Positions 10,498-59,584 of a DNA stretch of 64,000 nt are shown piece after piece. The translations under genes and the position numbers were made by a program. The stretch spans positions 1 through 64,000 of IMG/VR virus record IMGVR_UViG_3300027782_000025; one strand, given 5' to 3'. Positions within the stretch are counted from its first letter, which is position 1, and each line of letters opens with the position of its first letter. The notes under the pieces were generated by a model that worked only from the letters and a program-made list of their open reading frames with translations, was not told the DNA's origin and did no database searches.

Positions 10498-10527
10498 CTG
10501 TTTTCTCCTTTAAATTTTATTTTTCAT

Positions 10528-10599
10528 TGGGACGGGTGGGGATCGAACCCACTTCCTTAGTGTTATGAGCACTCTGCTCGGCCGTTGAGCTTCCGTCCC
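10528..10599 (-). tRNA. tRNA with CAT anticodon (elongator Met or Ile2), atypical, no encoded CCA
   Basis: Acceptor GGGACGG/CCGTCCC, D stem GCTC/GAGC, anticodon loop CTCATAA, T arm GTGGG-TTCGATC-CCCAC, discriminator A. Confidence 0.85.
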
Positions 10600-10611
10600 T
10601 CTAGCCAATAT

Positions 10612-10836
10612 CTACGCCAAAATCTTTTCAGCACTGATCAGCCTGCTCACTTGGTAGACAAGCTCGTCATCCACCGTACATCCCCTTTCGTAAACATCTA
10701 GGGAATCAGCTAGATCTCTGTCCTTAAACTTCTTTATAGCAAACCAGTGAGCCTCAGGCACGGTTTTGAAAGGTCCATATGTTCTCGGGACCACAGCCTG
10801 GCCCCCACAGCCGAATTCTACTACTATGAACATCAT
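10612..10836 (-). CDS. Hypothetical, paralog of 11602-11793
   Basis: SD AAGGAG; shared RT(Y/F)GPFxT..EAH and LVYQV/PVYQV motifs. Confidence 0.75.
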   Translation of the reverse strand: MMFIVVEFGCGGQAVVPRTYGPFKTVPEAHWFAIKKFKDRDLADSLDVYERGCTVDDELVYQVSRLISAEKILA

Positions 10837-10903
10837 TATCTCCTTGAAAAAGTGTCCGAAACCCCCAAAATACTGTGACAGACCAGAGCCGAAAATGCAA
10901 TGG

Positions 10904-11191
10904 TCATATCCTATAGAAATGGTATGACCAATCGAAACCACGGTCCCACCAGAAACCATGTTCCTTTGCCACTTTGTTCAGCCTATCAACATCCATATCA
11001 TCCTTACCAGCTGGGATATATCCATTTAATAATTCATAAAGCGGCCCCTCACATATCAGTGTAAAGGTTGAACCGTTTCCGACCTTTTCGTTTCGGTCTG
11101 CCCATTCTTCTTTGCTATAGATCTTGGTGTCTTCATATTTCTCGGCAAGACCATTTAAAACTTCGAGCATTTTTCCTTCATCGTAAGGCAT
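10904..11191 (-). CDS. Hypothetical early protein
   Basis: Cassette promoter 11230-11258 on -, SD AAGGAG. Confidence 0.75.
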   Translation of the reverse strand: MPYDEGKMLEVLNGLAEKYEDTKIYSKEEWADRNEKVGNGSTFTLICEGPLYELLNGYIPAGKDDMDVDRLNKVAKEHGFWWDRGFDWSYHFYRI

Positions 11192-11269
11192 TAGTTCTTC
11201 TCCTTGAAAAAGTGTTAAATCTCCGAGACCCTGTAACAAAATGGGGTTGCTGCGTCAACCCCTTAGGAA

Positions 11270-11440
11270 TTAGATCTCAGTGTACGCGACACTGGCCTTC
11301 TTTCCAAACATCGCCTGAGCCGTTTTCTCGGCTTGGTTTTGGCCGGTAGACCGAATGTAAAAATTCGCGACTTCAACACCTTTTTCGTCATAAACGATAA
11401 AAACTTTGGTGCCTTTACCGACGAACTTGATTTCACTCAT
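11270..11440 (-). CDS. Small hypothetical protein (56 aa, not in ORF track)
   Basis: MSEIKFVGKGTKVFIVYDEKG...AYTEI; CACACTTTTAGGAGA leader and promoter 11481-11509. Confidence 0.75.
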   Translation of the reverse strand: MSEIKFVGKGTKVFIVYDEKGVEVANFYIRSTGQNQAEKTAQAMFGKKASVAYTEI

Positions 11441-11480
11441 TTTTTCTTCTCCTAAAAGTGTGATTTTCTAACCCCAAAAC

Positions 11481-11551
11481 CCTGTAGCAAGCCGAGAAGC
11501 CTTTGTAAACAGTGTTTGAGGGTTTACAGGCGGGCGCCGGCTTGTTACAGG
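11481..11551. promoter_or_regulatory. Divergent promoter pair
   Basis: TTTACA-N17-TACAGG on both strands, -35 boxes 13 bp apart. Confidence 0.75.
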
Positions 11552-11601
11552 GAGAGGAGCGGGGACCGCAGTGGTGACCGCGAAACACACGGAGTAGAAA
11601 A

Positions 11602-11793
11602 ATGTTTACAGTTGTGCAGTTTGAGTGCGGCGAGACGGTTGTGGCGACCAGGACCTTTGGCCCCTTCGGGACCACTATTGAGGCCCACGTTTACGCACAG
11701 AACGTGTTCCCCGGCCTGAGCGTCGACGAGTACGGCAGAGGCGTGACTGAGGACGGAGACCCCGTCTACCAAGTGACACCACTGTCCAAGTAG
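11602..11793 (+). CDS. Hypothetical, paralog of 10612-10836
   Basis: ACACACGGAG leader. Confidence 0.75.
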   Translation: MFTVVQFECGETVVATRTFGPFGTTIEAHVYAQNVFPGLSVDEYGRGVTEDGDPVYQVTPLSK

Positions 11794-11871
11794 TTCCTAG
11801 GGGTTGCGTGAGCGACCCCCGTCTGTTACAAGGTTTTGGGTTCGAAACACACTTTCTTAAGGAGAGAAAAG

Positions 11872-12297
11872 ATGAGCTATGAATCGATGAGTGAAGCGGA
11901 GAAGTTAAAAATCTGGATCGCTGGCGTGAATGGAGAGAATAAGATGACCATCAGTGATTTTGACTATGAGCCGGGCGGGAAGTGGGACTGCGGGCATTTG
12001 AATTTCACTGCCACTACGCCTTTTGGCGACTTAGAATGGGAGGAAGTTATCCCAGGGCCACGCCATAGCGGCGACTCAGCGTCAGTTACAGTCACGTTGG
12101 ACGGGGATGACGTATCAGATTTATTCTGTGACCTAGACTTTGAAGCGCCACGCGAGGAAGGGCGCTGGGCAGACGAATTTAGAGAGGACGACGGGGTTTT
12201 GGATCAGCTCTTTGTCTACCTTGAGGCCATCAAAGATCAGCTGGTGGCGTTTAAAAAGGAGAAAAACGAGAGTCCTAGCGACGATAGAGACGAGTAA
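11872..12297 (+). CDS. Acidic hypothetical protein
   Basis: SD AAGGAGAG. Confidence 0.75.
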   Translation: MSYESMSEAEKLKIWIAGVNGENKMTISDFDYEPGGKWDCGHLNFTATTPFGDLEWEEVIPGPRHSGDSASVTVTLDGDDVSDLFCDLDFEAPREEGRWADEFREDDGVLDQLFVYLEAIKDQLVAFKKEKNESPSDDRDE

Positions 12298-12390
12298 TCG
12301 GTTTCCAAGGAGGAAAGCTGGGGGTTGCCCCAGCAGCCCCGTCTGTTACAAAGTATTGGGTTCGGAAATCACACTTTTAGGAGAAGAAAA

Positions 12391-12666
12391 ATGACAACTG
12401 AAGAATCGATCTACGTGGACATTATCGAAGACAAAGTCCCACCGACCAGCGTTCTTGTTACGAATGCCCCGATTGAAGCCAATATTAAGGAGCACAAAGA
12501 AATCGGCTCCCTTTGCCCCTACCAACGCGACACCTTGCGTTTTGTCAGCATCCTCAACGTCCATGACCGGATAGCTCAAGCTAAAGCGTGGAGGGAAGCG
12601 AATTACACCGTTCAAGGGCTGGTTCCGAACCTCCTTGAAACCGCCCGGAATTACGCCAAGAGCTAA
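12391..12666 (+). CDS. Hypothetical early protein
   Basis: Cassette promoter, SD AGGAG. Confidence 0.7.
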   Translation: MTTEESIYVDIIEDKVPPTSVLVTNAPIEANIKEHKEIGSLCPYQRDTLRFVSILNVHDRIAQAKAWREANYTVQGLVPNLLETARNYAKS

Positions 12667-12710
12667 CTTCCCTAGGGGTTTCGTAAACACACTTTTAAAG
12701 GAGAATCGAA

Positions 12711-13085
12711 ATGATAATTAAAAAGCTGATCTTCAGTAAATCGCAAACGTCTATCTTAAACGCATGGAGCCGTCAGCTCCAAGCATTATTCAGTGTCTCG
12801 CATGAAGGTGAAGAAGGCTATTTCCTCTACGAGGCGACATTTTACCGACAGTTTCCGACAAAAGATTCATCAATATTCGCTGACGATGACGACGATGTCG
12901 AGTACTTTTGCGACATCAAAAGTATTCTCACGGAAGACGACCTCATGTATGATGAGGACGAAATCTTTAGCGTCTTAAACGACTTTAATTATGGCGGCGC
13001 GTTCCATATGGAGCCAGAGCACAAAGAAATTACGCCATCAATCAAAGAGATAATCGAGGGTCTGTACAAGAAACCAATAATATAA
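12711..13085 (+). CDS. Hypothetical, paralog of 7332-7658
   Basis: SD AAGGAG; shared motifs. Confidence 0.75.
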   Translation: MIIKKLIFSKSQTSILNAWSRQLQALFSVSHEGEEGYFLYEATFYRQFPTKDSSIFADDDDDVEYFCDIKSILTEDDLMYDEDEIFSVLNDFNYGGAFHMEPEHKEITPSIKEIIEGLYKKPII

Positions 13086-13179
13086 TCCGGTTTCCAACGA
13101 GGAAAGCGGGTGGGGTTTACTCCTCCACTCGCCTTTGTTACAGGGTTTTGGGGTTTTAGCATTTTTTCAAGGAGAAAAA

Positions 13180-13860
13180 ATGGAAAATAGCTTCTTTGGT
13201 GACAAAAGAGTCCTTTTAAAATTTGATAAAAGAGACCAAGAATTCGAGAAATGGTTACTGAATTGTGAAGATCAAGCAAATACCATAGCATATATTAATG
13301 GGGTAATCGATGGAAGATGGCCAGAAGCAGAGCCGATCTTAATGAAAACAGAATACGCCGTAGGATATGCAGATAAATTCATTAAAGGAAGATGGCTTGA
13401 AGCCGAGCCATATATAATGAAAAACCCAATATTGGCCTATTGTTACGCTGAAGAAGTTATAAAAGGAAGATGGCTAGAAGCCGAACAAACCATAATGACA
13501 GATCCAGAATGCACCATCGCCTATGCTTTAGAAATCATCAAAGGAAGATGGATAGAAGCAGAACCTTTTATAAAGACTTCCCCAGCATGTGCCGCGGCGT
13601 ACGCTATCGGTATCACCAAGATGAGATGGGAAGACACACAGCTTGAATTGCGTATACTTGAATGTACGACAGAGTTAAACTACATCAGAAATCCTTCATC
13701 TGACTATTGGCAACATTCATGGGGAACCGGTGTTACTAAATACGTTTATGCCAGAATGGTTGCTAAAACATCTTGGAAAAAGCTGTATGCCGAAGTTAAA
13801 GCCACGCATGCCGAGATCACATGTTACGATAACATTAATCTCGTCGGTGTCGAAGAGTAG
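13180..13860 (+). CDS. 26-aa repeat (GRWxEAEPxI) solenoid protein
   Basis: Repeats with 78-bp period; ends DNINLVGVEE like the modules of 39607-44634. Confidence 0.85.
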   Translation: MENSFFGDKRVLLKFDKRDQEFEKWLLNCEDQANTIAYINGVIDGRWPEAEPILMKTEYAVGYADKFIKGRWLEAEPYIMKNPILAYCYAEEVIKGRWLEAEQTIMTDPECTIAYALEIIKGRWIEAEPFIKTSPACAAAYAIGITKMRWEDTQLELRILECTTELNYIRNPSSDYWQHSWGTGVTKYVYARMVAKTSWKKLYAEVKATHAEITCYDNINLVGVEE

Positions 13861-13925
13861 CTATTTCCACTCGGTTTCCATTTGTTACAGGGTTTTGGGT
13901 TTTAACACTTTTTTCAAGGAGAAAA

Positions 13926-15053
13926 ATGATGAATACTGTAGTAATGCAATCGGCCAGCCTCTACTTCAAAGACAATGTAAGTGACAAAGTCTACAACGTC
14001 ACCCTCGAAGAAGCAGATGGTGGATACATCGTCAACTGCTCATGGGGTAGACGAGGCGGAGCCTTACAAAGTGCCACGCAAACCAAATCCCCAGTATCCA
14101 TCGACAAAGCCATCGCCATCTACCATAAAAAACTATCCGAAAAAACCTCTAAAGGATACATGCCCACCTCCGACACCGGCAGAACACTCGGCAACTCCAT
14201 AACCGTGCCCGACACCGATAAACCATTCGAACCAATCTGTAACCTACTAAACCCTATAAACGAATACCAACTCAAACAACTGCTAATAGACGACTCTTGG
14301 ATCATGCAAGAAAAAATGGACGGCGTGCGCATGATCCTCACGCGCAAAGGCGACAGCATCACCGCAGTCAGCCGAACAGGACGCGAAGCCACAATCCCCC
14401 AAGAAGTACACGACACCCTCATCAAGACCTCAGTCCAGAACTACATCATCGACGGAGAACTAGTCGGCGACGTCTACCACGTATTCGACCTCCTAAGACT
14501 CCAAGCAATGGACTTCGCGGCCAAGAATACCTTCGAAGAAAGATATGAAGCACTCGTCGAACTACTCAACGGCATCGACGACACCAACGTCAAAGTCGTG
14601 AAGACCCACTCAGGCTACGACAAAACCCAGGCCTTCGAAGACCTTAAATCCGCCGAAGGCGTGGTGTTCAAGCACAAAAACGCGTTCTATAAGGCTGGTA
14701 GACCATCAAGCGGTGGCGGATACTTGAAATACAAGTTCTACAAAAGCTGCAGCGCTCTGGTCACCGGGATAAATGACAAAAGGTCTATAGCCCTGAGTTT
14801 AATCGAAGACATGCCAGAGCACGGTAGCGAATATGTCGTCGGTAGAAGGCTCATATCAGTAGGGAACTGCACCATCCCCGTGAATTATGACTTCCCACAA
14901 AATGGTGACATCGTTGAGATTAAATACCTCTATGCTCGGAAGCCTAGCAACGCGCTCTACCAGCCGAGCTACCTTGGTAAAAGGACGGACATCCAGCTTA
15001 AGGATGTCCTATTGTCGCAGCTCATCTATAAGGTGGGTGAGGAAGAGGAATAG
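13926..15053 (+). CDS. WGR domain + ATP-dependent DNA ligase
   Basis: SDKVY...WGRRG...K..EK..KGY (WGR); QEKMDGVR (KxDG), DGEL, FDLL, EGVVFK motifs; C-terminal OB fold. Confidence 0.85.
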   Translation: MMNTVVMQSASLYFKDNVSDKVYNVTLEEADGGYIVNCSWGRRGGALQSATQTKSPVSIDKAIAIYHKKLSEKTSKGYMPTSDTGRTLGNSITVPDTDKPFEPICNLLNPINEYQLKQLLIDDSWIMQEKMDGVRMILTRKGDSITAVSRTGREATIPQEVHDTLIKTSVQNYIIDGELVGDVYHVFDLLRLQAMDFAAKNTFEERYEALVELLNGIDDTNVKVVKTHSGYDKTQAFEDLKSAEGVVFKHKNAFYKAGRPSSGGGYLKYKFYKSCSALVTGINDKRSIALSLIEDMPEHGSEYVVGRRLISVGNCTIPVNYDFPQNGDIVEIKYLYARKPSNALYQPSYLGKRTDIQLKDVLLSQLIYKVGEEEE

Positions 15054-15154
15054 TACCATTTCCAACGAGGAAAGCATGGGGTGGGGGGATTTACTCTTCC
15101 GCCCCTTTTTGCTACAACGTATTGGGTTAATAACACTTTTCAAGGAGAAAAACG

Positions 15155-15367
15155 ATGAGATTCAATGTAACAGCCGAAAATGCCGAACGCCTAAGGCCAG
15201 ACGAAGTAAAAGCAATACTCGAGAACCTAATCGAAACCGCCTGCACTCATTTCGAAGACGTGCTAGACTCAGACTCGGACCACGACCCCGAGTGGAAAGA
15301 ATACGCTCGGAACTCCCTCGACATAAAATTCACAATCGAAATCGCCCAGAATCAAGGAGAAATATAA
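15155..15367 (+). CDS. Hypothetical early protein
   Basis: Cassette promoter, SD AAGGAG. Confidence 0.7.
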   Translation: MRFNVTAENAERLRPDEVKAILENLIETACTHFEDVLDSDSDHDPEWKEYARNSLDIKFTIEIAQNQGEI

Positions 15368-15570
15368 TGAAATACAAAATCCTAATCGACGACAACGTAA
15401 CCGACCTAATGGAAAAAGTCAACACCCACCTCGAAGACAAATGGGAAATAATAGGCTCCCACACTGTGGCCATCCGCAAAACACAAAACCGATACTCAGG
15501 CGAACGACTTATGGACTGCTATAGCCAGCTAGAATATACGCAAACAGTCATCAAACATATTGACGATTGA
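15367..15570 (+). CDS. Hypothetical (possibly DUF1737-like)
   Basis: TAATG coupling; YKIL...LxxxVNxxLxxxWxxxG pattern. Confidence 0.55.
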   Translation: MKYKILIDDNVTDLMEKVNTHLEDKWEIIGSHTVAIRKTQNRYSGERLMDCYSQLEYTQTVIKHIDD

Positions 15571-15632
15571 CAAAGCCCATTAAACCTGCTACAATAAAAC
15601 CAGATTTCACCATTTAACCAAGGAGCATAAGC

Positions 15633-15911
15633 ATGAAAAAGAAAACCGAAAAGAAACCAGAAGTAATGATCGTCTGGGCCTCAACCAAAGAACACCTTGA
15701 CAAAGGAGAAATCCACGTCCTCGACTCCTACGTCGGCCCCCGAAAATACCTAAAAGACGAACTCGATCCCAGACTAACCATGGGAAGCGACCAAAAACTC
15801 CCATTCGCCCAAACGTGGCAAGAAGCCGTTTTCTTCATGGGTGAAAACCTAGGCAAACCAGTACAACTCCTCACCTCCGTTGGCAAACGCGTCGGCCTCC
15901 TCGAAGACTAA
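15633..15911 (+). CDS. Hypothetical protein
   Basis: Promoter TTGACA-N17-TACAAT, SD AAGGAG. Confidence 0.7.
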   Translation: MKKKTEKKPEVMIVWASTKEHLDKGEIHVLDSYVGPRKYLKDELDPRLTMGSDQKLPFAQTWQEAVFFMGENLGKPVQLLTSVGKRVGLLED

Positions 15912-15920
15912 GGAAAAAAC

Positions 15921-16337
15921 ATGGACCCACTAAGAACCTGTACATGCTGCGATAAAGAGCTACCCCCGGCCTCCTTCCCAAGAGAAGTCGGGGACTGCGA
16001 AGAATGCTGCGCCAAACGCTTCCTAATAGATATGTTCGAAAGCCCAAAAAGCGAACAACACTTCTGGAAATTCCGCGCGTGGAGCACAACAGCCTACGAC
16101 ACCAAAAGCCTACTCGAAGAAGAATCCGAATACTTCCACATAGAAGTCATGCAAAAAAATCTCCGCATCACCCTAGGCATCAAGAAAAAGACTAATTCAG
16201 AAGACGAATATCTAATCTGGGTAGGTGACAAACAATTATTAGTAAAAGCCACCCCTATGACCCCCGAGACAATCGAACTCGGTGAAGACAGTGGCAAAGT
16301 AATAAGTATCCACGAAGCAAAAGACCGATTAGAATAA
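15921..16337 (+). CDS. Hypothetical with N-terminal Cys finger
   Basis: CTCC...CEEC; SD AAGGA. Confidence 0.7.
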   Translation: MDPLRTCTCCDKELPPASFPREVGDCEECCAKRFLIDMFESPKSEQHFWKFRAWSTTAYDTKSLLEEESEYFHIEVMQKNLRITLGIKKKTNSEDEYLIWVGDKQLLVKATPMTPETIELGEDSGKVISIHEAKDRLE

Positions 16338-16417
16338 TTCACATCCATAGAATTTACACCTTGACCATTACCTGCTACAAAGTATTGGGTTTTTAACACT
16401 TGTTCAAGGAAACTAAG

Positions 16418-17173
16418 ATGAATGCTGAAATGCTACGAGCATCGGCTACTCCGAGTAAAGCTTGCAGATATGCCATTGACAATGTTACAAAACGATGGAG
16501 AAGAAAAAAAGCTTTAGAACCAATAATAATGACAAGCGCATTCTGTGCTATGGATTACGCTTGCCATGTGATTGAAGGTCGTTGGCCAGAAGCCGAACCT
16601 ATTATAATAACAAATCCATATGCTGCCTTAGAATACGCTATAAACGTTATCAAAGGTAGATGGCCGATAGGCGAACCAATTATATTAACGGACCCTGCGC
16701 GATCAGTATTATATGCTGAATACGTCATCCGTGGCCGCTGGTTAGATGCCGAACCGAGCATTATGACGTTAGAACCATGCCGTGGTGAACATATTCAACG
16801 CTATGCCAAGGAAGTAATGAAAGGAAGATGGCTAGAGGCAGAATCCAACCTATCAAAAGACGCAGAATATTCTTATATCTATGCCAGAGAAGTAATAAAA
16901 GGCCGCTTCCACGAGGCAGAGCCTACCATAAAGGCAAACACACGATATGCTTATCAATACGCAAGAGACTGCATCAGAGGAAGATGGGAAGACCCTTTGG
17001 TGGAATTAAGAATCCTAGAATACGGCAGCTTTAGCATTCGCGGCCGCCCATCAGAATACGCGCTTGAAATCGCAAAAATGTCACCAGACTCACTAAGAGC
17101 AGAACTCGAAATATACCTCGCAGATTTCTTGCCGAACGATAATGACGACCTTACCGACACCAAATCAGAATAA
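16418..17173 (+). CDS. 26-aa repeat solenoid protein
   Basis: About 7 GRWxxAEPxI repeats; cap RWEDPxVELRILE..YA..IAKMS and tail DDLTDTKSE. Confidence 0.85.
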   Translation: MNAEMLRASATPSKACRYAIDNVTKRWRRKKALEPIIMTSAFCAMDYACHVIEGRWPEAEPIIITNPYAALEYAINVIKGRWPIGEPIILTDPARSVLYAEYVIRGRWLDAEPSIMTLEPCRGEHIQRYAKEVMKGRWLEAESNLSKDAEYSYIYAREVIKGRFHEAEPTIKANTRYAYQYARDCIRGRWEDPLVELRILEYGSFSIRGRPSEYALEIAKMSPDSLRAELEIYLADFLPNDNDDLTDTKSE

Positions 17174-17185
17174 AAGGAGTAAGTC

Positions 17186-17497
17186 ATGCTAAACTGGCTC
17201 AGAGAAAAATGGACCGTCAAACAAACACCCTGCAGTGGAGCCACCCCCAACTGCCACATAATATCCGCCGCCACCGGCAAAATCATCTTCAAGGATAACC
17301 GGTACGGCCGGTCTCTAGAAAGCGCCACCCTCATGAGCGCCGCCCCAGAACTCTACGAGGCCGCAGAAAACGCATACTGTGACCTCCTAAATATCCTCTC
17401 AAGCATTGACCCAGAAAAGAAAAGCCTAGCTTGGGAGACCATAGACCAACTACAGAACGCGCTCAAAAAAGCTACCAGCTACCACAACGAGGAATAA
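17186..17497 (+). CDS. Phage hypothetical (LxSAAPELYEA family)
   Basis: SD AAGGAG; AAP(E/D)L motif also in 32721-33086. Confidence 0.7.
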   Translation: MLNWLREKWTVKQTPCSGATPNCHIISAATGKIIFKDNRYGRSLESATLMSAAPELYEAAENAYCDLLNILSSIDPEKKSLAWETIDQLQNALKKATSYHNEE

Positions 17498-18153
17498 TGG
17501 CTAAAAAGCAACCACCAAGGCCAAGACACCCCGATGTCGACAAAGCCTGGGAACAACACCATAAGCTATTAAAATATTGGGCCTCTAAATGTAAAAGAAT
17601 ATTCGGCGGCCATGTAAACACATATCTATCCGAACTTTATATAAAGCTCAACAACGACCTATGGCTGTTCGACCCATCAAGAGGAGTAAAGTTCTCAACC
17701 TATTTCTCTACCCAAATACTTGGATACCTATACCGCATCGTCAGACTAGAATCAGAAGCCGAAATGGCCACTTGGGCCGGCACCTATTCAAAAAGCAAAA
17801 CCAGCTTCAAATGCAAAGTATTCAGCGAACAATGCTGCAACATAGATCGACAAGAGTTTAAAGACAAAAGAGATTACTACAACTGGGTGCACGATATGAT
17901 AGAAGAAATCGGTGGAAGAGAAGAAGCATGGTACTGGCTCACCTTCAACATAAGCGCCAGATCGATAGATATAATCCACCGCCGATTCGTCCTAGGGCAC
18001 ACCCTAGAAGAAATCGGCCGGCATTATAATGTGACTAGAGAAAGAATAAGACAATTAGAGTTTTTAGCGATGGCCACAATCAAAGAACGATTCGGTAACA
18101 ATAAAAAAATCGAAACACTAATCAAAAGATATGGCTTAAAATTTAAAGATTAA
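17497..18153 (+). CDS. RNA polymerase sigma-70 family factor
   Basis: Region 2 FDPSRGVKFSTY; region 4 TLEEIGRHYNVTRERIRQLE. Confidence 0.9.
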   Translation: MAKKQPPRPRHPDVDKAWEQHHKLLKYWASKCKRIFGGHVNTYLSELYIKLNNDLWLFDPSRGVKFSTYFSTQILGYLYRIVRLESEAEMATWAGTYSKSKTSFKCKVFSEQCCNIDRQEFKDKRDYYNWVHDMIEEIGGREEAWYWLTFNISARSIDIIHRRFVLGHTLEEIGRHYNVTRERIRQLEFLAMATIKERFGNNKKIETLIKRYGLKFKD

Positions 18154-18365
18154 TAAGGATAGCCCCAGTGCGGAACCAACACATCACAAACCCTAATCAT
18201 ATGCTCAGCAGGAATACAACGCGCCACCAACTGCCGGTCCTGTGACGTCCGATAAGACGCCACATCCTTCAACCCCTCCTCCTTCGACTCATAAATAATC
18301 TCATTAATCGGCGCCCAAGTATCACCCTTCTTACTCGACTTCTTCAATTTAACAAGTCTAAACAT
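18150..18365 (-). CDS. Hypothetical protein
   Basis: ATG overlaps the upstream TAA. Confidence 0.65.
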   Translation of the reverse strand: MFRLVKLKKSSKKGDTWAPINEIIYESKEEGLKDVASYRTSQDRQLVARCIPAEHMIRVCDVLVPHWGYPY

Positions 18366-18799
18366 TACCAACTCCCTTTAAAAGAAGCGCCAAGGTTCAC
18401 CTTATTAACCACATGAGGGTCCTGCGGCAACACATCAGTATTAACATTAGTCTCAATAGATCTAGTGCAACCGCAAAATAAACACAAAACTAAACACACT
18501 AGTAAAGCTTTACATTTCTCCCAAAGGAAATAACTGAGCCCAGAAGGCATATAACCATGCTTTAACCACAGCCTACCCTGCTCGCGCCGATTCTCAAGGA
18601 ATTTAACCCTTAAGTATCTCTTAACAATCCCACCACCACAATCAACACTGGCGATCGTAGTAGCCCCGCCAAGATCCAAACTCGGCGGGGCTACAGTTAC
18701 CATGATTTCTCTATGATCAACACCCTCTTTGATCAGCTTTATAATCATCTCTTCGATAAAATAATCAGCTGACTCTTCTGGCAACATTTCTTCTAACAT
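18365..18799 (-). CDS. Hypothetical with internal hydrophobic/lipobox-like segment
   Basis: SD GGAGG; LLVCLVLCLFCGC. Confidence 0.65.
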   Translation of the reverse strand: MLEEMLPEESADYFIEEMIIKLIKEGVDHREIMVTVAPPSLDLGGATTIASVDCGGGIVKRYLRVKFLENRREQGRLWLKHGYMPSGLSYFLWEKCKALLVCLVLCLFCGCTRSIETNVNTDVLPQDPHVVNKVNLGASFKGSW

Positions 18800-18825
18800 A
18801 ATTCCTCCATGAAATATATGATTAA

Positions 18826-19125
18826 TTAATCCTCGTCATGCTCCCCATCTTCTTCGACTTCATCCAAAAAATCATCATCAACTGGCTTCATCTTAGCTAC
18901 CCGATCCCAAGCGTCAAGGATCTGATCGGGAATGCCAGCGACCTCTTTTGGATCACCCTTATCCAGCAGCATAGCTGCCAATAGGATATCAAGCGACGCC
19001 CCCATCATACCGATAGCCCCCATGATTTTCTGGGGCGGCTCTTCGCAATACTTCTGAATCTCAGCCAAAGCATTATGCATCGCATTGTGAACCGGAATCA
19101 ACTGACTAACTCTTCTATCGCTCAT
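18826..19125 (-). CDS. Hypothetical acidic-tail protein
   Basis: Promoter TTGACA-N17-TACAGG at 19164-19192 (-), SD AAGGAG. Confidence 0.75.
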   Translation of the reverse strand: MSDRRVSQLIPVHNAMHNALAEIQKYCEEPPQKIMGAIGMMGASLDILLAAMLLDKGDPKEVAGIPDQILDAWDRVAKMKPVDDDFLDEVEEDGEHDED

Positions 19126-19188
19126 TTTCGTCTCCTTAGAAAGATTTATCATCACCACAAAAGCCTGTAACAGACTATAGATAATTTG

Positions 19189-20289: not shown

Positions 20290-20301
20290 ACCGGGCTCCT
20301 A

Positions 20302-37838: not shown

Positions 37839-38981
37839 TCAATATTCTGCGTAGTCTCTGAGCTTGTCATAGAGTTTAGCGAGGAATCTGGAATGGTCGA
37901 TTACTTTTTTAAATCTCTGCTTTTCGGATTCAGTATTACCAGCTTTGCTTAAGGTGTTTTTGAGCTTATCCTCTGTTTGACCAAGAAAGGCTATTTCTGT
38001 AAGGATTTCTTCGAAATTAGATAAGTTACGGATGAAGTCGTATAGGTCACCTAGATATTCTCGCTGTACATTCGTGTTCTTATATTTTAGATATAATTTA
38101 TCTAATGAGCCTATATCTAGTTTAGATTTAATGACCATTAGGATGTTTTTAGCTTGTGTGATTATAGCAGATTGTAGTCTACCTAATTTAAGACTATGCT
38201 CTCTGGCTTTTTTGGCTGCTTCTGGTCTAAACTTATTAACTAATTGCCCAAAATAACCTGGTTTTTTATAATAGCCTGTGTCTTTCTCAGAGGTTATCTC
38301 TATGTTTTTATATTTCCTATTAGTTAAAAGTCTTAAAGCTTTCTCCTCACTATCGGCTTCGATGTGTCCGTGTTTGCGTATGCCGGTATTAGGATCATTA
38401 GCTATATATTCATATGTTTCTTCGGTTATTGGCTTTTTATTTTTCTTTTTGTGTTCGAGAGCTATAAATTCTTTTAAGCCTCTTATTAGACTACTGACAT
38501 CTGGTTCGATTTTAAGAAAGAGATCTTTACAGTTAGCTTTTAGAGTGGGCAGAACTTTGGCTAAGAAATATTTCGATAAAGCCGCAGGGTCTGTAACGTC
38601 AGCGTTGGCTGGGCGCTTTAGTCTCTGTTCATTAGATTTAATGATGTATTTGTTACGCTTGGTGTCAAATGTCGCTATTTTTATAGGTAGTGCGGCGCTA
38701 GGAAGTTTACTTAAGAAGCTAGGTGACTTTTTTAAATCTAGACCCAGATTAACATGGCGATAGTGGTAATCTATTACCACATTTACATATTTTTGGTTTT
38801 TTCTAGACTGCACGATCTGAGATACAGGGCCAATTTGTTTAGTCTGGCCGTTCCTATCTGTAAAACTGATTTGGTTTTTCGCCGGTATAAATGAGTATAC
38901 TTCATCTGCGGATCGGTCTTTAAGAGGTATAACCTGCTGGGTGCTTCCCACCACTTCATTTATAAGCTGATATAATCTCAT
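37839..38981 (-). CDS. Hypothetical with MRLYQLINE leader (putative head protein)
   Basis: 380 aa; leader class shared with other zone-3 genes. Confidence 0.75.
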   Translation of the reverse strand: MRLYQLINEVVGSTQQVIPLKDRSADEVYSFIPAKNQISFTDRNGQTKQIGPVSQIVQSRKNQKYVNVVIDYHYRHVNLGLDLKKSPSFLSKLPSAALPIKIATFDTKRNKYIIKSNEQRLKRPANADVTDPAALSKYFLAKVLPTLKANCKDLFLKIEPDVSSLIRGLKEFIALEHKKKNKKPITEETYEYIANDPNTGIRKHGHIEADSEEKALRLLTNRKYKNIEITSEKDTGYYKKPGYFGQLVNKFRPEAAKKAREHSLKLGRLQSAIITQAKNILMVIKSKLDIGSLDKLYLKYKNTNVQREYLGDLYDFIRNLSNFEEILTEIAFLGQTEDKLKNTLSKAGNTESEKQRFKKVIDHSRFLAKLYDKLRDYAEY

Positions 38982-45578: not shown

Positions 45579-46901
45579 TCAACCTACACCCAATGGCCCT
45601 ATATCTCTAATATACATCTTATATCTGGATGGGTCTACTGCCTTTAGTATGCCTTCTATTTCTAGCCATCGATGCCCCAAAACATCAGTACAAAACATAT
45701 TTATGATAGGAATATTATTAAGAGCCGTTTCAATATCGAAATCATATATTACCTTCTCCCTGATCTCGTCTGATGTCATTTTTTCGAAGCTTGTTAGAAA
45801 GTAAGGATATTTGCTAATTATTAAGATGTTAGTAACCGGATCATCCCATAGTTTTCCGAAATGTCTTGCGTAATTCATTGCTTCGTGAATACTAGACTGT
45901 ATGATTTGCTCGGCCGCTGGCCAAGGGCGCTCTAAAACATTCCTTGCGTATTCACTAGCGAGGTAATCGACTCTAAGAATGGCCGGTTCGCCTTTTGGCC
46001 ATGGCGCCTTGAGTATCTGATTTGCATAGACATAGCTACTATCAGCATGTCTTGATATTGCATTTTCAGCCTCTGGCCAGCTTTCGTAGCCTTTATCTCT
46101 AGCGAAAATAACTAAATCCGCTGGTTTAATAACTTTCGAATCTACCAGGTCATCAATTTGTTTCGATGATAATCTGCTTAAATCTGATGTTTCATAATAA
46201 TGTCGCCAGTTCTTCTCGTCTTGGTCAGATTCGCCCTCAAGTAAAAAACTTCTCAATTCGCTGTTGATCTGGGCCATATTACTCAAGAATATTTTAGCAT
46301 ATGAACTGCAGTTAGTAGTTTTATGGTCTTGTATATCTTTCTTAGCCTTAGATATTATCTGGTGATCGACGATAGCGCCGTTTTTTCTTCCTGTCCATCT
46401 CTTCCTTAAAATCTTCAGAGCATAGAGGGCGGCAGTTTCGGGATCTGACCCTATTATGCTTTCGCCTAATTCCCATTCTTCCTTAAGAATCGTCATAACA
46501 TATGCTAAAGCGCCCTGTGGTGTTTCGATGATAATTGATTCCGCTGTTCTCCATCTCCCTGATTTATTATGGCTATTGCTTTCGATTATTATAGAAGCAT
46601 AATCGATTAGATTTTTAGGGTCCCGTCGTTCCAGTAGTTCTCTTTCACCAGCCGGCCATCTCTCCCCAATTATATCAGCATAGTCGATTATCTGTTTTAA
46701 AGACATCTCAGCAGGATCTGGTTCACCACTCTTCTCTTCTAGCATAGATATATTCATCGCCTCTGTAAAAAATCCGGCGGCATCATAAAACGAACGCTTG
46801 GCATTTACCGAAACGCTTACTTCTTCTAACAGACGCATACTATCCATACCCAACGGCATTTTTTTAAAGCGGCCAGTATTATGATTTTGCGGGTTTTTCA
46901 T
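45579..46901 (-). CDS. 26-aa repeat solenoid protein, two modules (start uncertain, possibly 46838 MRLLEE)
   Basis: RWPAGE, RWRTAES, WPEAE, WPKGEP, WPAAE repeats. Confidence 0.8.
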   Translation of the reverse strand: MKNPQNHNTGRFKKMPLGMDSMRLLEEVSVSVNAKRSFYDAAGFFTEAMNISMLEEKSGEPDPAEMSLKQIIDYADIIGERWPAGERELLERRDPKNLIDYASIIIESNSHNKSGRWRTAESIIIETPQGALAYVMTILKEEWELGESIIGSDPETAALYALKILRKRWTGRKNGAIVDHQIISKAKKDIQDHKTTNCSSYAKIFLSNMAQINSELRSFLLEGESDQDEKNWRHYYETSDLSRLSSKQIDDLVDSKVIKPADLVIFARDKGYESWPEAENAISRHADSSYVYANQILKAPWPKGEPAILRVDYLASEYARNVLERPWPAAEQIIQSSIHEAMNYARHFGKLWDDPVTNILIISKYPYFLTSFEKMTSDEIREKVIYDFDIETALNNIPIINMFCTDVLGHRWLEIEGILKAVDPSRYKMYIRDIGPLGVG

Positions 46902-52319: not shown

Positions 52320-53390
52320 TTATTCTTGCTCAAGATCTGAAAGGTCAAGACCATCATCTTTGAGAAGCTCTGATACTATGAAATTATTGTTTTCTATGAA
52401 AGATTCTAAATCTTCAAAGCCAGCCAATACCGTCGCATAAAATTTAAGCTGACTTCTAGCATGACCACTTAATTCTTTAAGCTTTATCATCTCGCGTTCT
52501 AATGCCGGATCGTCCCAAAAATAAGTCGTCAACGAGCCAACAGCATAATTAAGAGCTTGTCTAGTGTCTGTCTTAATTATACCCTCAGCCTCTCTCCAAC
52601 GCTCTTCTAGAATCTCGTTAGCATAATCTACACAGCATTCGGCATTTTTTAATTCTAAGAGTGCGTCTTCGCCATCAGGCCAAGAGCCTTTAACATGAAT
52701 ACAATATTCACATATCGCTCTAGGGTTTGTTAAGATAACTGGTTCGCCTTCTGGCCAAGGCTCACCCATGATGTCTTTAGCGTATAAATAGCAAGCATAC
52801 GCACTTTTTAGCACATATGGTTTAGCTAATTCGAATATCTCATCCCTATATTCAGGACTTACTTTATATGAATTAAGGAATTGTACAACTTGTATCGGCC
52901 TCCATAATTTAAATTCGGGTATCTCGTAAGGCCCGACCCACGCTTCAATGATTGATCTCTTTTCCATGAGCGAATCTATAGCGTTTTCGAGTTTTTCGTT
53001 TAACATTGAATCAAGACCATCGCTTGATAACAGATCCTCGATCTTTAAATTAAATGATTTACAATAAATAGGTGCCCAAACCATAGATTCGGCTATGGTT
53101 TTATTGGCTCTCTGGTTTTTCCAGCGTTCGTGCATTATATCCTGAGCATACCTAACAGCAGAGGTCGGGTCTTTAGCTATAGTGTCTTCTGCATCAGGCC
53201 ATCTTATAGGAATACCGTGGTTATTTTTATTTATTACATTTTTGGCATACAGATATGATAAGTAAGGGTCAGTTTTAATTATATTTTCATTTTCGAAAAT
53301 CCTAAGACCTGTTAAAACAGCTGATTTATAACATTCCGCCGGCGATTTTATTTTTTGGGTAATGCTCTTTTTAACAGCATGATTAAGCAT
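52320..53390 (-). CDS. 26-aa repeat solenoid protein, two modules
   Basis: RWPDAE/WPEGEP/RWREAE repeats; internal LENAIDSLMEKRSIIE; tail DLSDLEQE. Confidence 0.8.
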   Translation of the reverse strand: MLNHAVKKSITQKIKSPAECYKSAVLTGLRIFENENIIKTDPYLSYLYAKNVINKNNHGIPIRWPDAEDTIAKDPTSAVRYAQDIMHERWKNQRANKTIAESMVWAPIYCKSFNLKIEDLLSSDGLDSMLNEKLENAIDSLMEKRSIIEAWVGPYEIPEFKLWRPIQVVQFLNSYKVSPEYRDEIFELAKPYVLKSAYACYLYAKDIMGEPWPEGEPVILTNPRAICEYCIHVKGSWPDGEDALLELKNAECCVDYANEILEERWREAEGIIKTDTRQALNYAVGSLTTYFWDDPALEREMIKLKELSGHARSQLKFYATVLAGFEDLESFIENNNFIVSELLKDDGLDLSDLEQE

Positions 53391-53405: not shown

Positions 53406-55127
53406 TTACACGTAGGAAGCTTCTTGAGCGCCTAAGGTCGGCACATCTATCTTGAGATCCTGTAACTTTTTTATAACATCAGCATATAACAATTGACCTT
53501 TTTTCTTAGGATCATTTTGATCGACTATAGTCGAGAGTGCCTGCCATATTTCTAGAGGTACCAATTCGACCATCTTGGCTGTGAACTTATTAAATCTTAT
53601 CAGCGTTACTAAAGAACGAATATCGCCGCACAAGCATACCACCACCCTTGGATCGCCCATAATATCTTCGGCCCCAGCACCAGAGCTTAAAAACTGAACC
53701 ATTGGCGCAGGGAAGGTTTTTCTATCTGACACAGGCCTTCTTAGCCCTAAAAATAGTTCCTTGGTCGCTGTTTTGCCTATAACCAGATGGCCCGCTGCGT
53801 GGTAAATGACTGAGCCGTATATCGTTGGTTTTCTCACAAATAGGCTAACGATTTCTTTTGTACTATCAGAGATCTCTAATTCGGAGTCACTAGCTAATCC
53901 GTAGCCGCTAGCTGAACCGGTACCAGCCAAATAGAGTTCGGATAAGCCTAATATTTGCAAGGTTTGCATTAAAGATGAGGTATCGAAATCTGCGCCAGCA
54001 TCGTTTAATTTGTATTTCACTTCGTTCCTTGCATTGTCGATAAGAGGTTTAACTGCTATAGAGATAAATTTAGGATTCCTAGCGAGTTGAAGGCTATCGA
54101 CTATTTGTGATCTTAACTGTGGATTATTTGTTACCTGTTCAACACCACCAAACCTGACTATCCCAGCGATATTTTCAGCTTGAACTTCCTGATAGTTTTT
54201 GATGTAACCTATCGTTTCATCCTGAGTAGCGCCCTCTGGTGGGCTATAAGATAACATCGTCTTAGCCGCCATCATCGCAGTCAAAAACATCTTATTAATG
54301 TTCGTATCCACTTTATTTCCGACCTCTGCGCCAGAGCGATCCATGAACTGCTCGTCTTTCCCCTTCACTACTGTTTGGTAGGTAGCCACTTTATCCTTAA
54401 ACATTGTATAGATAGAATCATTTTTAAGATAATTCTCAGCTCTGCTGCCGTTAGGATAATCAGTCCTAGTGCACCATTTCGACCCCATACCAGCCTCTGC
54501 TAAAGACGTGATTACGGTTTCTGGTTCTAAGCCAAAATTTTTAGCCAAGTCCAATCGAGGATACATGTAGACCTCATACCCATTTTGGTCTAGCATCTTT
54601 ACAGCACCGCTTGTGACAATGGGATTGAAAGCTGTGGCCTTCTTATTTCTTAACTTGTCCATAAGATTTTGGGAGGCAATCAGTGCGCTTCTTATATCAT
54701 GTTTAAGTAAGTCTGTAGGTACTTCGGGAAAATTCTTTTTTAGTTGGTCTTTTCGTCCTGGATTACTAAAAAATTGGATAAGTTCGACCATACTTGCTGT
54801 ATCTTCAGGCAGTTTAATCTGTGGATTATCGCTTGGCATATTCCGGAATCCGTCGATAGCGATTTTACCATCATTGAATTGTGCTGATATCCACGGCTTT
54901 TTTAGGAATTCGGTACCGACCACCCACTTTTTCGTCGGTGTCGGATCACAGTCAGATATAATTTTTACCAATTCTGCTGCCTTACCCAGGTCTTGTGATT
55001 CAATACCAGATGATTTAGGATCAATCGATGGCATCTTATCTCCGCACATAAACTGTATTCTTTTTGGGTCTAGTTTCGATAAGACTTTTTGGATATCAGT
55101 ATTTTCGAGAATTAAGGATAACTTCAT
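53406..55127 (-). CDS. Hypothetical with MKLSLILE leader (putative head protein)
   Basis: 573 aa; GSKWCTR motif. Confidence 0.75.
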   Translation of the reverse strand: MKLSLILENTDIQKVLSKLDPKRIQFMCGDKMPSIDPKSSGIESQDLGKAAELVKIISDCDPTPTKKWVVGTEFLKKPWISAQFNDGKIAIDGFRNMPSDNPQIKLPEDTASMVELIQFFSNPGRKDQLKKNFPEVPTDLLKHDIRSALIASQNLMDKLRNKKATAFNPIVTSGAVKMLDQNGYEVYMYPRLDLAKNFGLEPETVITSLAEAGMGSKWCTRTDYPNGSRAENYLKNDSIYTMFKDKVATYQTVVKGKDEQFMDRSGAEVGNKVDTNINKMFLTAMMAAKTMLSYSPPEGATQDETIGYIKNYQEVQAENIAGIVRFGGVEQVTNNPQLRSQIVDSLQLARNPKFISIAVKPLIDNARNEVKYKLNDAGADFDTSSLMQTLQILGLSELYLAGTGSASGYGLASDSELEISDSTKEIVSLFVRKPTIYGSVIYHAAGHLVIGKTATKELFLGLRRPVSDRKTFPAPMVQFLSSGAGAEDIMGDPRVVVCLCGDIRSLVTLIRFNKFTAKMVELVPLEIWQALSTIVDQNDPKKKGQLLYADVIKKLQDLKIDVPTLGAQEASYV

Positions 55128-55283
55128 ACGATATTTTCTCATATCTGGCAAGTATTATATTTTTATATTTTATTAAAATCATGATACATATCTAATGATA
55201 AAAAGACACCAGTTATGTAGCTAATAGAGCCGTGCCAAATATAAAATATGTACCAATAACTTATTAAGAACAATTTTAAAAGC

Positions 55284-58153: not shown

Positions 58154-59584
<1,431 letters not shown>

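What the first reader, a model, noticed from the sequence alone, without database searches (positions are those of the whole stretch)
13180..17173. Stand-alone early versions of the 26-aa solenoid module
Seen: 13180-13860 and 16418-17173 are single modules (repeats, RWED..ELRILE cap, acidic tail NINLVGVEE or DDLTDTKSE) under early promoters and without the Glu leader. Related modules are concatenated in late-zone genes 39607, 45579 and 52320. That gives about 14 module copies in five genes. Inference: one binding scaffold deployed both from the virion and by early transcription, like a diversified anti-defence or decoy repertoire.
Basis: partly seen in the sequence, partly recalled or inferred. 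Interest (0 to 1): 0.6.

Follow-up and report, generated by a model that had tools for sequence, protein, structure and literature searches.

The report
Phage solenoid-repeat family, early and capsid-borne
A freshwater jumbo phage carries an uncharacterised family of 26-residue helical-repeat proteins: two single-module genes behind host-type early promoters, and long multi-module proteins whose conserved linkers look like cutting sites for the phage's T4-type head protease, so the same binding module is probably both delivered with the DNA and made early in infection.

Summary
Genes 13180-13860 and 16418-17173 each encode one module: 4-6 tandem 26-aa repeats (P..A..YA..VIKGRWPEAEP.I), a 'RWED..ELRIL' cap, a helical end piece and an acidic tail. 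The same module recurs 8 times in 39607-44634 and in two blocks each in 45579-46901 and 52320-53390, and nowhere else in the 275-kb genome.

The repeat folds as a HEAT-like alpha-solenoid. It matches no Pfam, NCBIfam, PHROG, PADLOC or PDB family and is almost entirely confined to phages, with up to about 30 tandem copies in one contig.

Both stand-alone genes sit behind a stem-loop plus sigma70-type promoter plus conserved leader, about 20 copies of which are confined to the first 30 kb. This resembles the PeSL cassettes of T4-type phages. Gene 13180 is a cassette that is present or absent among lake variants.

Delivery from the virion is supported only indirectly. The phage has T4-type head genes, including an S77 prohead protease. 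The polyprotein linkers (..AIDRLMPLI-x-E) keep a hydrophobic-x-Glu pattern in 49 of 50 linkers across seven orthologues. A domain fused to the repeats in other phages is a mass-spectrometry-detected virion protein in phage PA5oct.

The anti-defence or decoy role is untested. I classify this as a new variant of known kinds.

The parts
13106..13179 (+). PeSL-like cassette head in front of g13180. It comprises a G+C-rich stem-loop (13106-13132) that holds the -35 TTTACT (13116-13121), a 17-nt spacer with TG at 13136-13137, the -10 TACAGG (13139-13144), and a conserved leader GGGTTTTGGGGTTTTAGCA..TTCAAGGAGAA ending at the ATG.
   Evidence: the same element stands in front of about 20 genes in the first 30 kb only
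13180..13860 (+). Stand-alone single module of 226 aa: 4-5 repeats, cap MRWEDTQLELRILE, end helix YARMVAKTSWKKLYAEV, tail DNINLVGVEE. It is an accessory cassette gene, absent from the related contig L066 and from variants in lake metagenomes.
   Evidence: anatomy; presence/absence; joints 13176>13905 and 12680>13881; orthologue P0079; contigs from an RNA library lie on 13260-13620 and 13666-13849
16353..16417 (+). Promoter and leader of g16418: -35 TTTACA (16353-16358), 17-nt spacer with TG at 16373-16374, -10 TACAAA (16376-16381), then leader GTATTGGGTTTTTAACACTTGTTCAAGGAAACTAAG.
   Evidence: in one lake variant a different gene follows this leader from position 16409 (loose end in run X23)
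16418..17173 (+). Stand-alone single module of 251 aa: 6-7 repeats, cap GRWEDPLVELRILE, end helix YALEIAKMSPDSLRAELE, tail NDNDDLTDTKSE. The AlphaFold2 (AF2) model is an all-alpha solenoid with a disordered tail.
   Evidence: (pLDDT 85.7); orthologues at 87-88% identity
39607..44634 (-). 1675-aa concatemer. It has an N-terminal leader ..IDAIKHMLIE (residue 25), 8 modules that each end in the acidic tail, 7 linkers (6 of them 'AIDRLMPLI.E' and 1 'QIIVE'), and a C-terminal non-repeat domain (RKDYWGRRREFKE..) ending DDINLSDIDEE. Proposed to be a polyprotein cut by the prohead protease.
   Evidence: orthologues with 5-11 modules and conserved linkers
45579..46901 (-). 440-aa protein with two repeat blocks. 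Its N-terminal region has leader-like ..MDSMRLLEE and ..NISMLEE|KSGEPDP. It has no canonical acidic tail.
52320..53390 (-). 356-aa protein with two modules. An internal linker-like stretch reads ENAIDSLMEKRSIIE, and the C-terminus has the canonical cap and tail DGLDLSDLEQE.
53406..55142 (-). 578-aa protein directly upstream of 52320-53390 (15-nt gap). It has a CTS-like start (MRKYR)MKLSLILE|N. Residues 57-274 are homologous to the 'DPTP..GTKWCT' domain that is fused to the 26-aa repeats in other phages and is found in virions of PA5oct.
   Evidence: (hhalign 97.6%, E 3e-12)
37839..38981 (-). 380-aa protein with the CTS-like N-terminus MRLYQLINE|, lying next to the polyprotein gene cluster.
58154..59584 (-). 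476-aa protein with the CTS-like N-terminus MKLSILYE|.

Best explanation
The five genes encode one phage-specific family of HEAT-like alpha-solenoids. Each solenoid is built from 26-residue helix-turn-helix repeats. The conserved residues (Y7, A8, R15, W16, A19, E20, P21, I23) form the core. The variable positions on the first helix form a surface that differs from module to module. This is the design of a protein-binding scaffold.

A complete module is repeats, then a cap, then an end helix, then a disordered acidic C-terminal peptide (D-x-D-L-S/T-x-T-x-E-E).

The phage deploys this module in two ways.

(1) Two leaderless single modules are transcribed by the host sigma70 RNA polymerase. Their promoters are stem-loop/promoter/leader cassettes in the early arm of the genome. 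One of the two (13180) is a mobile, dispensable cassette.

(2) Multi-module proteins, above all the 1675-aa protein, carry an N-terminal leader and an 11-residue leader-like linker ending in hydrophobic-hydrophobic-x-Glu between modules. I propose that these proteins are taken into the T4-type prohead and cut there by the S77 prohead protease into single modules of about 15-45 kDa, which enter the cell with the DNA. Those modules would end in the same acidic tail as the stand-alone proteins only if the 11-residue linker peptide is also removed, and that second cut was not examined.

The arrangement parallels T4's packaged Alt alongside its early paralogues ModA and ModB.

What is shown: the repeats, the modules, the fold class, the promoter class, the cassette polymorphism, the T4-type head genes and the conservation of the linkers. 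What is inferred: early timing, packaging, cleavage and binding of host targets. The targets are unknown, and host takeover or counter-defence is only the likeliest category.
For: Family and fold
- Repeats and modules are confirmed.
- AF2 models reach pLDDT 85-86, with the solenoid above 90, the tail as coil and the linker helices at 62-80.
- Structure searches give only generic HEAT/ARM/PUF matches. The nearest ESM Atlas clusters are phage hypotheticals at TM 0.63-0.67.
- The family is essentially confined to phages: 46 viral stretches against 3 among 185,579 prokaryote genomes.

Early deployment
- About 20 promoter cassettes lie only in the first 30 kb, including those in front of both stand-alone genes.
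- Indels are bounded by these cassettes.
- Contigs from RNA libraries lie on g13180.

Virion deployment
- The genome has a Gp23 capsid protein, a gp20 portal and an S77 protease.
- The capsid protein has I-L-E at residues 63-65 and 79-81, ahead of the Gp23 domain that begins at residue 89.
- CTS-like N-termini (M-K/N-L/I-S-x-I-L-x-E) occur on 8 of 257 proteins against 1 of 1411 internal Met windows. They include four consecutive genes next to the capsid gene and genes interleaved with the repeat genes.
- 49 of 50 linkers in seven orthologues (35-87% identical) keep [LIVM][LIV]-x-E, with x free and Glu invariant. The number of modules varies from 5 to 11.
- About 30 paralogues in another Gp23-type phage carry an extra N-terminal MKLRDLFE|A that their homologues lack.
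- The domain fused to the repeats in at least 16 proteins is homologous to PA5oct EST35_0205, a virion protein by ESI-MS/MS (PMC7318152).
- The T4 CTS and its processing rule are taken from PMC9026906.
Against: - No expression timing, virion proteomics or cleavage data exist for this uncultured phage.
- The multi-module genes lie 60 kb from the head gene cluster, among glycosyltransferase, radical-SAM and nucleotide-metabolism genes.
- (L/I)-x-E is a loose motif. A conserved linker helix could instead be a docking or spacer element. A similar 'VPLIIE' occurs near the C-terminus of a sigma-like protein.
- g52320 has no N-terminal leader, and the g39607 leader ends at residue 25, not 10 as in T4.
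- The CTS-like pattern was defined after looking at the data, so its statistics are optimistic.
- The protease-linker complex prediction gave no answer.
- Nothing identifies a target. The 16418 orthologue shows no accelerated divergence and there is no match to defence-related models.
- The RNA-library contigs could derive from contaminating DNA.
Confidence: 0.4

Rival explanations
1. The multi-module proteins are never packaged. They are large intracellular scaffolds made in middle or late infection, for example to organise enzymes of DNA or surface modification encoded nearby. The conserved linker is then a structural spacer or docking helix. The stand-alone genes are simply smaller early members of the same scaffold family.
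For: The neighbours are glycosyltransferases, methyltransferases, a radical-SAM enzyme and a phosphoribosyltransferase, not structural genes. The linker is predicted to be a helix. (L/I)-x-E is a loose motif, and a similar one sits in a sigma-like protein.
Against: - In the linkers Glu is invariant while the residue before it varies freely over 13 residue types across orthologues. That fits a protease site better than a packing helix.
- The stand-alone proteins stop exactly at the module/leader boundary.
- CTS-like leaders are found on flanking genes.
- The fusion partner domain is a virion protein in PA5oct.
Confidence: 0.3
2. The modules are packaged but act structurally inside the head, for example as an internal body, as scaffold or core components, or as counter-ions that organise the DNA. 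They would not be effectors acting on the host.
For: The head is T4-type, with leader-bearing proteins. Paralogous internal-protein families that are cut by the prohead protease are known in giant phages (SPN3US: PMC5694885, PMC7411985, titles and abstracts seen).
Against: Most predicted fragments are acidic (pI 4.5-5.1), which suits DNA condensation poorly. Leaderless copies behind early promoters would have no role in a head that has not yet been built. One of them is dispensable in natural variants.
Confidence: 0.12
3. The acidic modules with their acidic tails act as nucleic-acid mimics or decoys that soak up a host nuclease or another DNA-binding defence protein.
For: Net charge is -6 to -25 for most modules, and there is a conserved D/E-rich C-terminal peptide. 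Deployment is at or just after DNA entry (inferred).
Against: One module is basic (pI 8.9), and the repeat part of g16418 has pI 8.6. The fold is a generic solenoid, not a known DNA-mimic fold. There is no sequence or structural link to any known anti-defence protein.
Confidence: 0.1
4. The co-occurrence of early and late versions is an assembly artefact: the G+C-richer first 32 kb belongs to a different phage than the rest.
For: G+C drops from 44-52% to about 38-40% at about 32 kb.
Against: - Independent JGI contigs bridge the junction from the 31485 gene into the 1675-aa gene.
- The related 91.6-kb Logan contig carries both the early arm (L066) and an orthologue of the polyprotein (P0129).
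- The cap-and-tail module is shared by both parts and is absent from 46 other viral loci.
Confidence: 0.03

Closest known systems
T4 internal proteins and Alt with their capsid targeting sequence (CTS), processed by prohead protease gp21; the early paralogues ModA and ModB
   Same: - The phage has T4-type head genes, including an S77 (gp21-like) protease.
- Short leaders end in hydrophobic-x-Glu.
- The proposed cargo proteins are variable and non-essential-looking, and are encoded away from the head cluster.
- One protein family exists both as a packaged form and as an early-expressed form, as with Alt versus ModA/ModB.
   Different: - There is no sequence similarity to IPI-III or Alt.
- The cargo is a solenoid repeat, not an enzyme or a small basic protein.
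- The leader-like element is repeated between 5-11 concatenated modules, which would make the protein a polyprotein. I know of no such internal-protein polyprotein in T4-type phages (from memory).
- The N-terminal leader is 25 residues, not 10.
- Neither packaging nor cleavage has been shown.
PeSL (promoter-early stem-loop) cassettes of T4-type phages (PMC2839356, PMC4122927)
   Same: - The element is a composite of a stem-loop and a sigma70-type early promoter.
- It is repeated in front of many small ORFs.
- Indels between close relatives begin and end in the repeated element. The 13180 cassette is an example.
   Different: - The sequence differs, and a conserved leader of about 35 nt with a strong Shine-Dalgarno sequence is attached.
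- All copies are concentrated in one G+C-richer 30-kb arm instead of being scattered over several hyperplastic regions.
- Early timing has not been measured.
HEAT/ARM/PUF-type alpha-solenoids, and short-period helical repeats such as LRV (PF01816) and DUF4116 (PF13475)
   Same: - The predicted structure is a stack of two-helix repeats forming a superhelix. The best matches are HEAT proteins (symplekin, PP2A-A, importins, YibA) at Z 7-8.
- LRV-containing phage clusters appear at TM 0.48.
- In the Atlas feature search, DUF4116 was the commonest Pfam family in one cluster resembling the N-terminal domain (score 0.88, a lead only).
   Different: - The period is 26 residues, much shorter than HEAT (37-47) or ARM (42).
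- No HMM match to any of these families was found.
- The Z scores lie within the range the tool gives for unrelated helical repeats.
Pseudomonas phage PA5oct virion protein EST35_0205 (QCG76086.1)
   Same: Its N-terminal half is homologous to the 'DPTP..GTKWCT' domain that is fused to the 26-aa repeats in other phages and is encoded next to 52320-53390 here. It also starts with a CTS-like MKLFEVFTLYE.
   Different: It has no 26-aa repeats. Its function is unknown. Its place in the virion (head, tail or internal) was not determined here.

Membership tests
HEAT-like alpha-solenoid (structural class) | Tandem two-helix repeats that stack into a superhelix | tested here: met
   AF2 models have pLDDT 85-86 with alternating helices of about 12 and 7 residues in every 26 residues. 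The best VIA matches are HEAT proteins at Z 7-8.2.
HEAT / ARM / PUF / TPR / Sel1 Pfam families | Match to the family HMM at or above the curated score | tested here: not met
   There is no such family even at E <= 1 in Pfam, none in NCBIfam and no PDB sequence match.
DUF4116 (PF13475) | HMM match | tested here: not met
   There is no match in the two proteins or anywhere in the genome at E <= 10. The only link is a shared fusion partner suggested by an Atlas lead.
LRV, leucine-rich repeat variant (PF01816) | 24-residue alpha/3-10 repeat with an HMM match | tested here: not met
   There is no Pfam hit. The structural resemblance reaches only TM 0.48 to an LRV-containing cluster.
T4-type CTS-targeted, gp21-processed head proteins | The genome encodes a T4-type prohead protease and head genes | tested here: met
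   Peptidase_S77 at E 3e-15, Gp23 at 2e-78 and Portal_T4 at 3e-66; PHROG major head protein, portal and terminase.
T4-type CTS-targeted, gp21-processed head proteins | An N-terminal leader ending in (L/I)-x-E | tested here: inconclusive
   g39607 has ..HMLIE at residue 25, conserved in orthologues. g45579 has ..RLLEE and ..SMLEE. g52320 has none. The two stand-alone genes have none, as the model expects.
T4-type CTS-targeted, gp21-processed head proteins | Presence in virions and cleavage at the motif | not testable with these tools
   The phage is uncultured. Only a related domain is known from PA5oct virions. The complex prediction gave no answer.
PeSL cassettes | A composite of stem-loop and sigma70-type early promoter, repeated in front of ORFs | tested here: met
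   Searches show about 20 copies. The -35 lies in or next to a G+C-rich stem-loop, followed by a 17-nt spacer, a TGn motif and TACAGG/TACAAA.
PeSL cassettes | Indels between close relatives are bounded by the motif | tested here: met
   The stretch 13180-13878 is missing from L066, with the flanking leader shared. Joints 13176>13905 and 12680>13881 appear in lake runs, and a different gene follows the leader at 16409 in run X23.
PeSL cassettes | Early transcription by host RNA polymerase | not testable with these tools
   Only contigs from metatranscriptome libraries were available. They show neither transcript starts nor timing.

The most novel reading that the evidence does not exclude
The 1675-aa protein and its orthologues, with 5-11 modules, are capsid-loaded polyproteins. 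A T4-type prohead protease cuts them at the conserved ..PLI-x-E linkers and so releases a set of different solenoid binders that are injected with the DNA. Leaderless paralogues on mobile early-promoter cassettes supply a second, exchangeable wave of the same binders. This would be a previously undescribed way of packaging a diversified effector repertoire in phage heads.
Probability: 0.3. Interest if true: 0.75.

Novelty: new variant of a known kind. Interest (0 to 1): 0.55.

Why it matters
The repeat is an unannotated family, almost entirely confined to phages, that is expanded in large T4-type phages from lakes. This phage has 14 modules and another contig has about 30 genes, so naming and defining the family would annotate hundreds of 'hypothetical' proteins.

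If the polyprotein reading is right, it would extend the T4 capsid-targeting principle to concatenated cargo. It would also give a sequence rule, leader or no leader, for telling injected copies of a family from early-expressed ones.

The promoter cassettes show that PeSL-like gene shuffling operates in a distant freshwater branch of the T4 superfamily. The 26-residue solenoid is also one of the shortest-period two-helix repeats, which may interest people who design repeat proteins.

Tried and rejected
- Family scans of the two proteins against Pfam, PHROGs, NCBIfam and PADLOC gave only sub-threshold noise (SymE, DUF4216, DUF982).
- Megablast and tblastn of the region against 50,697 phage records found no match.
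- The search for related loci failed twice: the alignment query had no conserved stretch, and the single-protein query found no relative. A degenerate DNA pattern was used instead.
- A full-text paper search for 'RWPEAEP' found nothing. A jumbo-phage comparative review (PMC7824862) does not mention the family.
- PDB Foldseek, PDB profile and VIA-wide searches gave only generic solenoids.
- The genome search could not read the Logan contig L066.
- A staggered alignment of module pairs (A2) was unusable and was replaced by A3.
- Complex prediction of the S77 protease with linker residues 1470-1520 returned 'no answer' (score 0.01). This is evidence neither for nor against binding.
- The idea that the 642-aa protein with 'VPLIIE' is another leader-bearing head protein was dropped. 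It looks like a sigma factor and the motif is C-terminal.
- The idea that the PcfJ-like 629-aa protein of the head cluster is related to the fused N-domain was rejected (hhalign probability 0.3%).
- The acidic-tail motif was sought on other proteins of the genome and is essentially confined to this family.
- A late-promoter motif was not established. Only AT-rich AAATATA/TATATAA boxes are enriched 3-5 fold upstream of non-early genes, including 39607, 45579, 53406 and the portal gene.
- The large representative-protein search was not used, because relatives were already plentiful.

Full report
**Setting**

The window is the first 64 kb of a 274,625-bp IMG/VR virus record, which is linear and about 70% complete. 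The phage is widespread in freshwater and lake metagenomes, including viral fractions, and is found in 17 studies.

Its head genes are T4-type:
- a Gp23 capsid protein at genome 110326-111900;
- a scaffold-like gene;
- a Peptidase_S77 prohead protease at 112700-113452;
- a gp20 portal that contains an intein;
- a large terminase.

The nearest cultured capsid proteins are under 37% identical.

The first ~32 kb has 44-52% G+C, against 38-40% in the rest. This is not an assembly chimera:
- Independent JGI contigs bridge the junction.
- A related 91.6-kb contig carries both the early arm and an orthologue of the 1675-aa gene.

**Observation**

Both ORFs are real. Each starts at an ATG behind a strong Shine-Dalgarno sequence.

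Each encodes one module:
- 4-7 tandem repeats of 26 residues, with consensus P-x-x-A-Y-x-Y-A-x-x-V-I-K-G-R-W-P-E-A-E-P-x-I-x-T-D;
- a half-repeat cap, 'RWED..ELRIL';
- an end helix, 'YA..VAKMS.E.L.AE.E';
- an acidic tail.

Across 25 repeats, W16, E20 and I23 are invariant. Positions 2, 3, 6, 9, 10 and 22 are the most variable.

The two proteins match each other at E 1e-30 and match three minus-strand genes, and nothing else in the 275 kb matches. The cap-and-tail HMM finds 8 copies in the 1675-aa protein, 1 in 52320-53390 and 1 in each stand-alone gene.

**What the repeat is**

AF2 models are confident, all-alpha solenoids with a disordered tail:
- Gene 16418: pLDDT 85.7.
- Module 7 of the polyprotein with both flanking linkers: pLDDT 85.0.
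- In the module-7 model the linker helices score only 62-80.

Structure searches return only generic HEAT/ARM/PUF-type matches: Foldseek E > 0.2 and VIA Z <= 8.2. These values lie within the range the tool gives for unrelated helical repeats.

No Pfam, NCBIfam, PHROG, PADLOC or PDB sequence family matches.

The nearest ESM Atlas clusters are 'hypothetical proteins', 75-100% viral by recorded taxa. The word search found 216 relatives, almost all without a Pfam domain.

A degenerate DNA pattern for KGRWPEAEP hits 46 stretches of IMG/VR but only 3 among 185,579 prokaryote genomes. In those viral loci 101 ORFs carry the repeat. Jumbo-phage records hold 3-7 tandem paralogues, and one 84.9-kb contig holds about 30.

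This is therefore an uncharacterised multigene family that is almost entirely confined to phages. The complete module with cap and tail is restricted to this phage lineage plus a few distant relatives (P0070, P0076, P0100).

**Early deployment**

Upstream of both genes, and of about 20 genes in the first 30 kb only, lies a composite element. It consists of:
- a G+C-rich stem-loop;
- a -35 close to TTGACA;
- a 17-nt spacer that ends in TGn;
- a -10 of TACAGG or TACAAA;
- a conserved leader of about 35 nt, GGGTTTTGGGTT..AACAC..TTCAAGGAGA.

This has the anatomy of the PeSL cassettes of T4-type phages (PMC2839356; PMC4122927).

The element also behaves like PeSLs:
- The related contig L066 is colinear with window 8584-27149 at 80-92% identity. 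It lacks exactly 13180-13878, and the flanking leader is shared.
- Lake metagenomes contain joints 13176>13905 and 12680>13881.
- They also contain copies of 13180 in other upstream contexts.
- One variant has a different gene following the leader at 16409.

Contigs from metatranscriptome libraries lie on 13180 at 100% identity. They cannot show transcript starts or timing, and they could derive from DNA. Early timing is therefore inferred from the promoter type and its placement.

The 16418 orthologue is 87% identical, which is ordinary for the region (range 64-100%). There is thus no sign of unusually fast diversification.

**Virion deployment**

The three multi-module genes lack the early cassette. 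They have AT-rich boxes upstream like those in front of the portal gene, which is weak evidence. Their neighbours are enzymes, not structural genes.

The case for packaging rests on four observations.

1. The phage has a T4-type S77 protease. In T4, gp21 cuts after (L/I)-x-E, and a 10-residue N-terminal CTS that ends in such a site carries internal proteins into the prohead (PMC9026906).

2. In the 1675-aa protein every module except the first is followed by '[AS]ID.L.PLI-x-E', and the protein begins with '..IDAIKHMLIE'.
   - Six further orthologues, 35-87% identical and with 5-11 modules, keep this pattern.
   - 49 of 50 linkers have [LIVM][LIV]-x-E, with Glu invariant and x ranging over 13 residue types.
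   - The N-terminal leader and the C-terminal 'RKDYWGRRKEFKE' domain are conserved as well.
   - The stand-alone proteins end exactly at the module/leader boundary.

3. Short CTS-like N-termini (MKLSILYE, MNLSIILE, MKISMLLE, MKIKQIITE, MNISSILHE and others) occur on 8 of 257 predicted proteins, against 1 of 1411 internal Met windows.
   - They include four consecutive genes next to the capsid gene, and the genes 37839, 53406 and 58154 that are interleaved with the repeat genes.
   - The pattern was defined after inspecting the data, so the statistic is optimistic.
   - In another Gp23-type phage, about 30 paralogues carry an extra N-terminal 'MKLRDLFE|A' that homologues elsewhere lack.

4. At least 16 metagenomic relatives fuse the repeats to an N-terminal 'DPTP..GTKWCT' domain (A4).
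   - This domain is homologous to residues 57-274 of the 578-aa protein encoded directly upstream of 52320-53390 (hhalign 97.6%, E 3e-12).
   - It is also homologous to PA5oct EST35_0205 (99.6%, E 8.5e-25).
   - That PA5oct protein is annotated as a structural protein detected by ESI-MS/MS (PMC7318152).

The predicted fragments are 15-45 kDa and mostly acidic, with pI 4.5-5.1 and one at 8.9.

None of this shows packaging or cleavage directly. The protease-linker complex prediction gave no answer.

**Function**

The fold and the pattern of conserved core against variable surface fit a protein-binding scaffold. The conserved acidic C-terminal peptide looks like a short linear motif, and its partner is unknown.

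Deployment at DNA entry plus early transcription, a dispensable cassette copy and variable module numbers all point to host takeover or counter-defence. This is a category, not a demonstrated function.

The closest functional parallel is T4's packaged Alt alongside its early paralogues ModA and ModB. That parallel rests on established knowledge of T4 and was not tested here.

**Verdict**

- Novelty: a new variant of known kinds, namely a solenoid scaffold, CTS-type head cargo and PeSL-type cassettes. The polyprotein arrangement is the unusual element.

Noticed in passing
window 1-32300 versus the rest of the genome: The left arm has 44-52% G+C with a strong A>T and C>G skew on the + strand. 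The remaining 240 kb has 38-40% G+C. The junction is bridged by independent contigs, so one phage genome has two compositional compartments, and the richer one holds all the sigma70-type promoter cassettes.
   Followed up: partly
window about 760-30400, e.g. 3641-3690, 11824-11875, 13136-13179, 15110-15154, 16373-16417: A conserved leader of about 35 nt (GGGTTTTGGGTT..AACAC..TTCAAGGAGA) lies between the -10 and the ATG of about 15-20 early genes. It matches no Rfam family. It may be a shared translation or stability element.
   Followed up: partly
window 13926-15053 (+): An ATP-dependent DNA ligase with an N-terminal WGR domain lies between the two stand-alone solenoid genes.
   Followed up: no
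window 17497-18153 (+); genome 87625-89553 (-): There is a small protein with sigma70 region 4 directly downstream of 16418. A 642-aa sigma-like protein lies elsewhere in the genome. The phage may redirect the host RNA polymerase.
   Followed up: no
genome 116637-119147 (-), outside the window: The T4-type portal gene carries an intein (Intein_splicing domain at residues 102-252) and a C-terminal Gly/Ala/Pro-rich low-complexity stretch.
   Followed up: no
genome 113433-116576 (-), outside the window: A 1047-aa protein between the portal and protease genes has an extremely acidic C-terminal third and ends ..DRDDLDNIDL, which is reminiscent of the module tail.
   Followed up: no
genome 106380-110176 (-), outside the window: Four consecutive genes next to the capsid gene start with M-K/N-L/I-S-x-I-L-x-E. 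One of them (629 aa) has a weak PcfJ-like domain. These are candidate CTS-targeted head cargo.
   Followed up: partly
L024, L025, L028, L029, L033, L037 (IMGVR_UViG_3300035181_001867, 84.9 kb): About 30 tandem paralogues of 170-295 aa belong to the same repeat family. Each begins MKLRDLFEAMDLYKYHSNPEKLHG. The record has a Gp23-type capsid gene.
   Followed up: partly
window 33283-37009: The stretch with the lowest G+C (32-35%) holds three methyltransferase-like genes and a family-11 glycosyltransferase. Further glycosyltransferases and a radical-SAM gene lie at 39007-39564, 49866-50600 and 50655-51614. This is possibly a DNA or surface sugar-modification island.
   Followed up: no
window 10528-10599 (-): A tRNA-Met (CAT) is the only tRNA in the window.
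   Followed up: no
L066 12896-13277 (related contig; the equivalent region in the window is about 20.4-20.8 kb): The relative's gene calls include a DksA/TraR-type zinc finger and a CsrA-like protein in the early arm.
   Followed up: no
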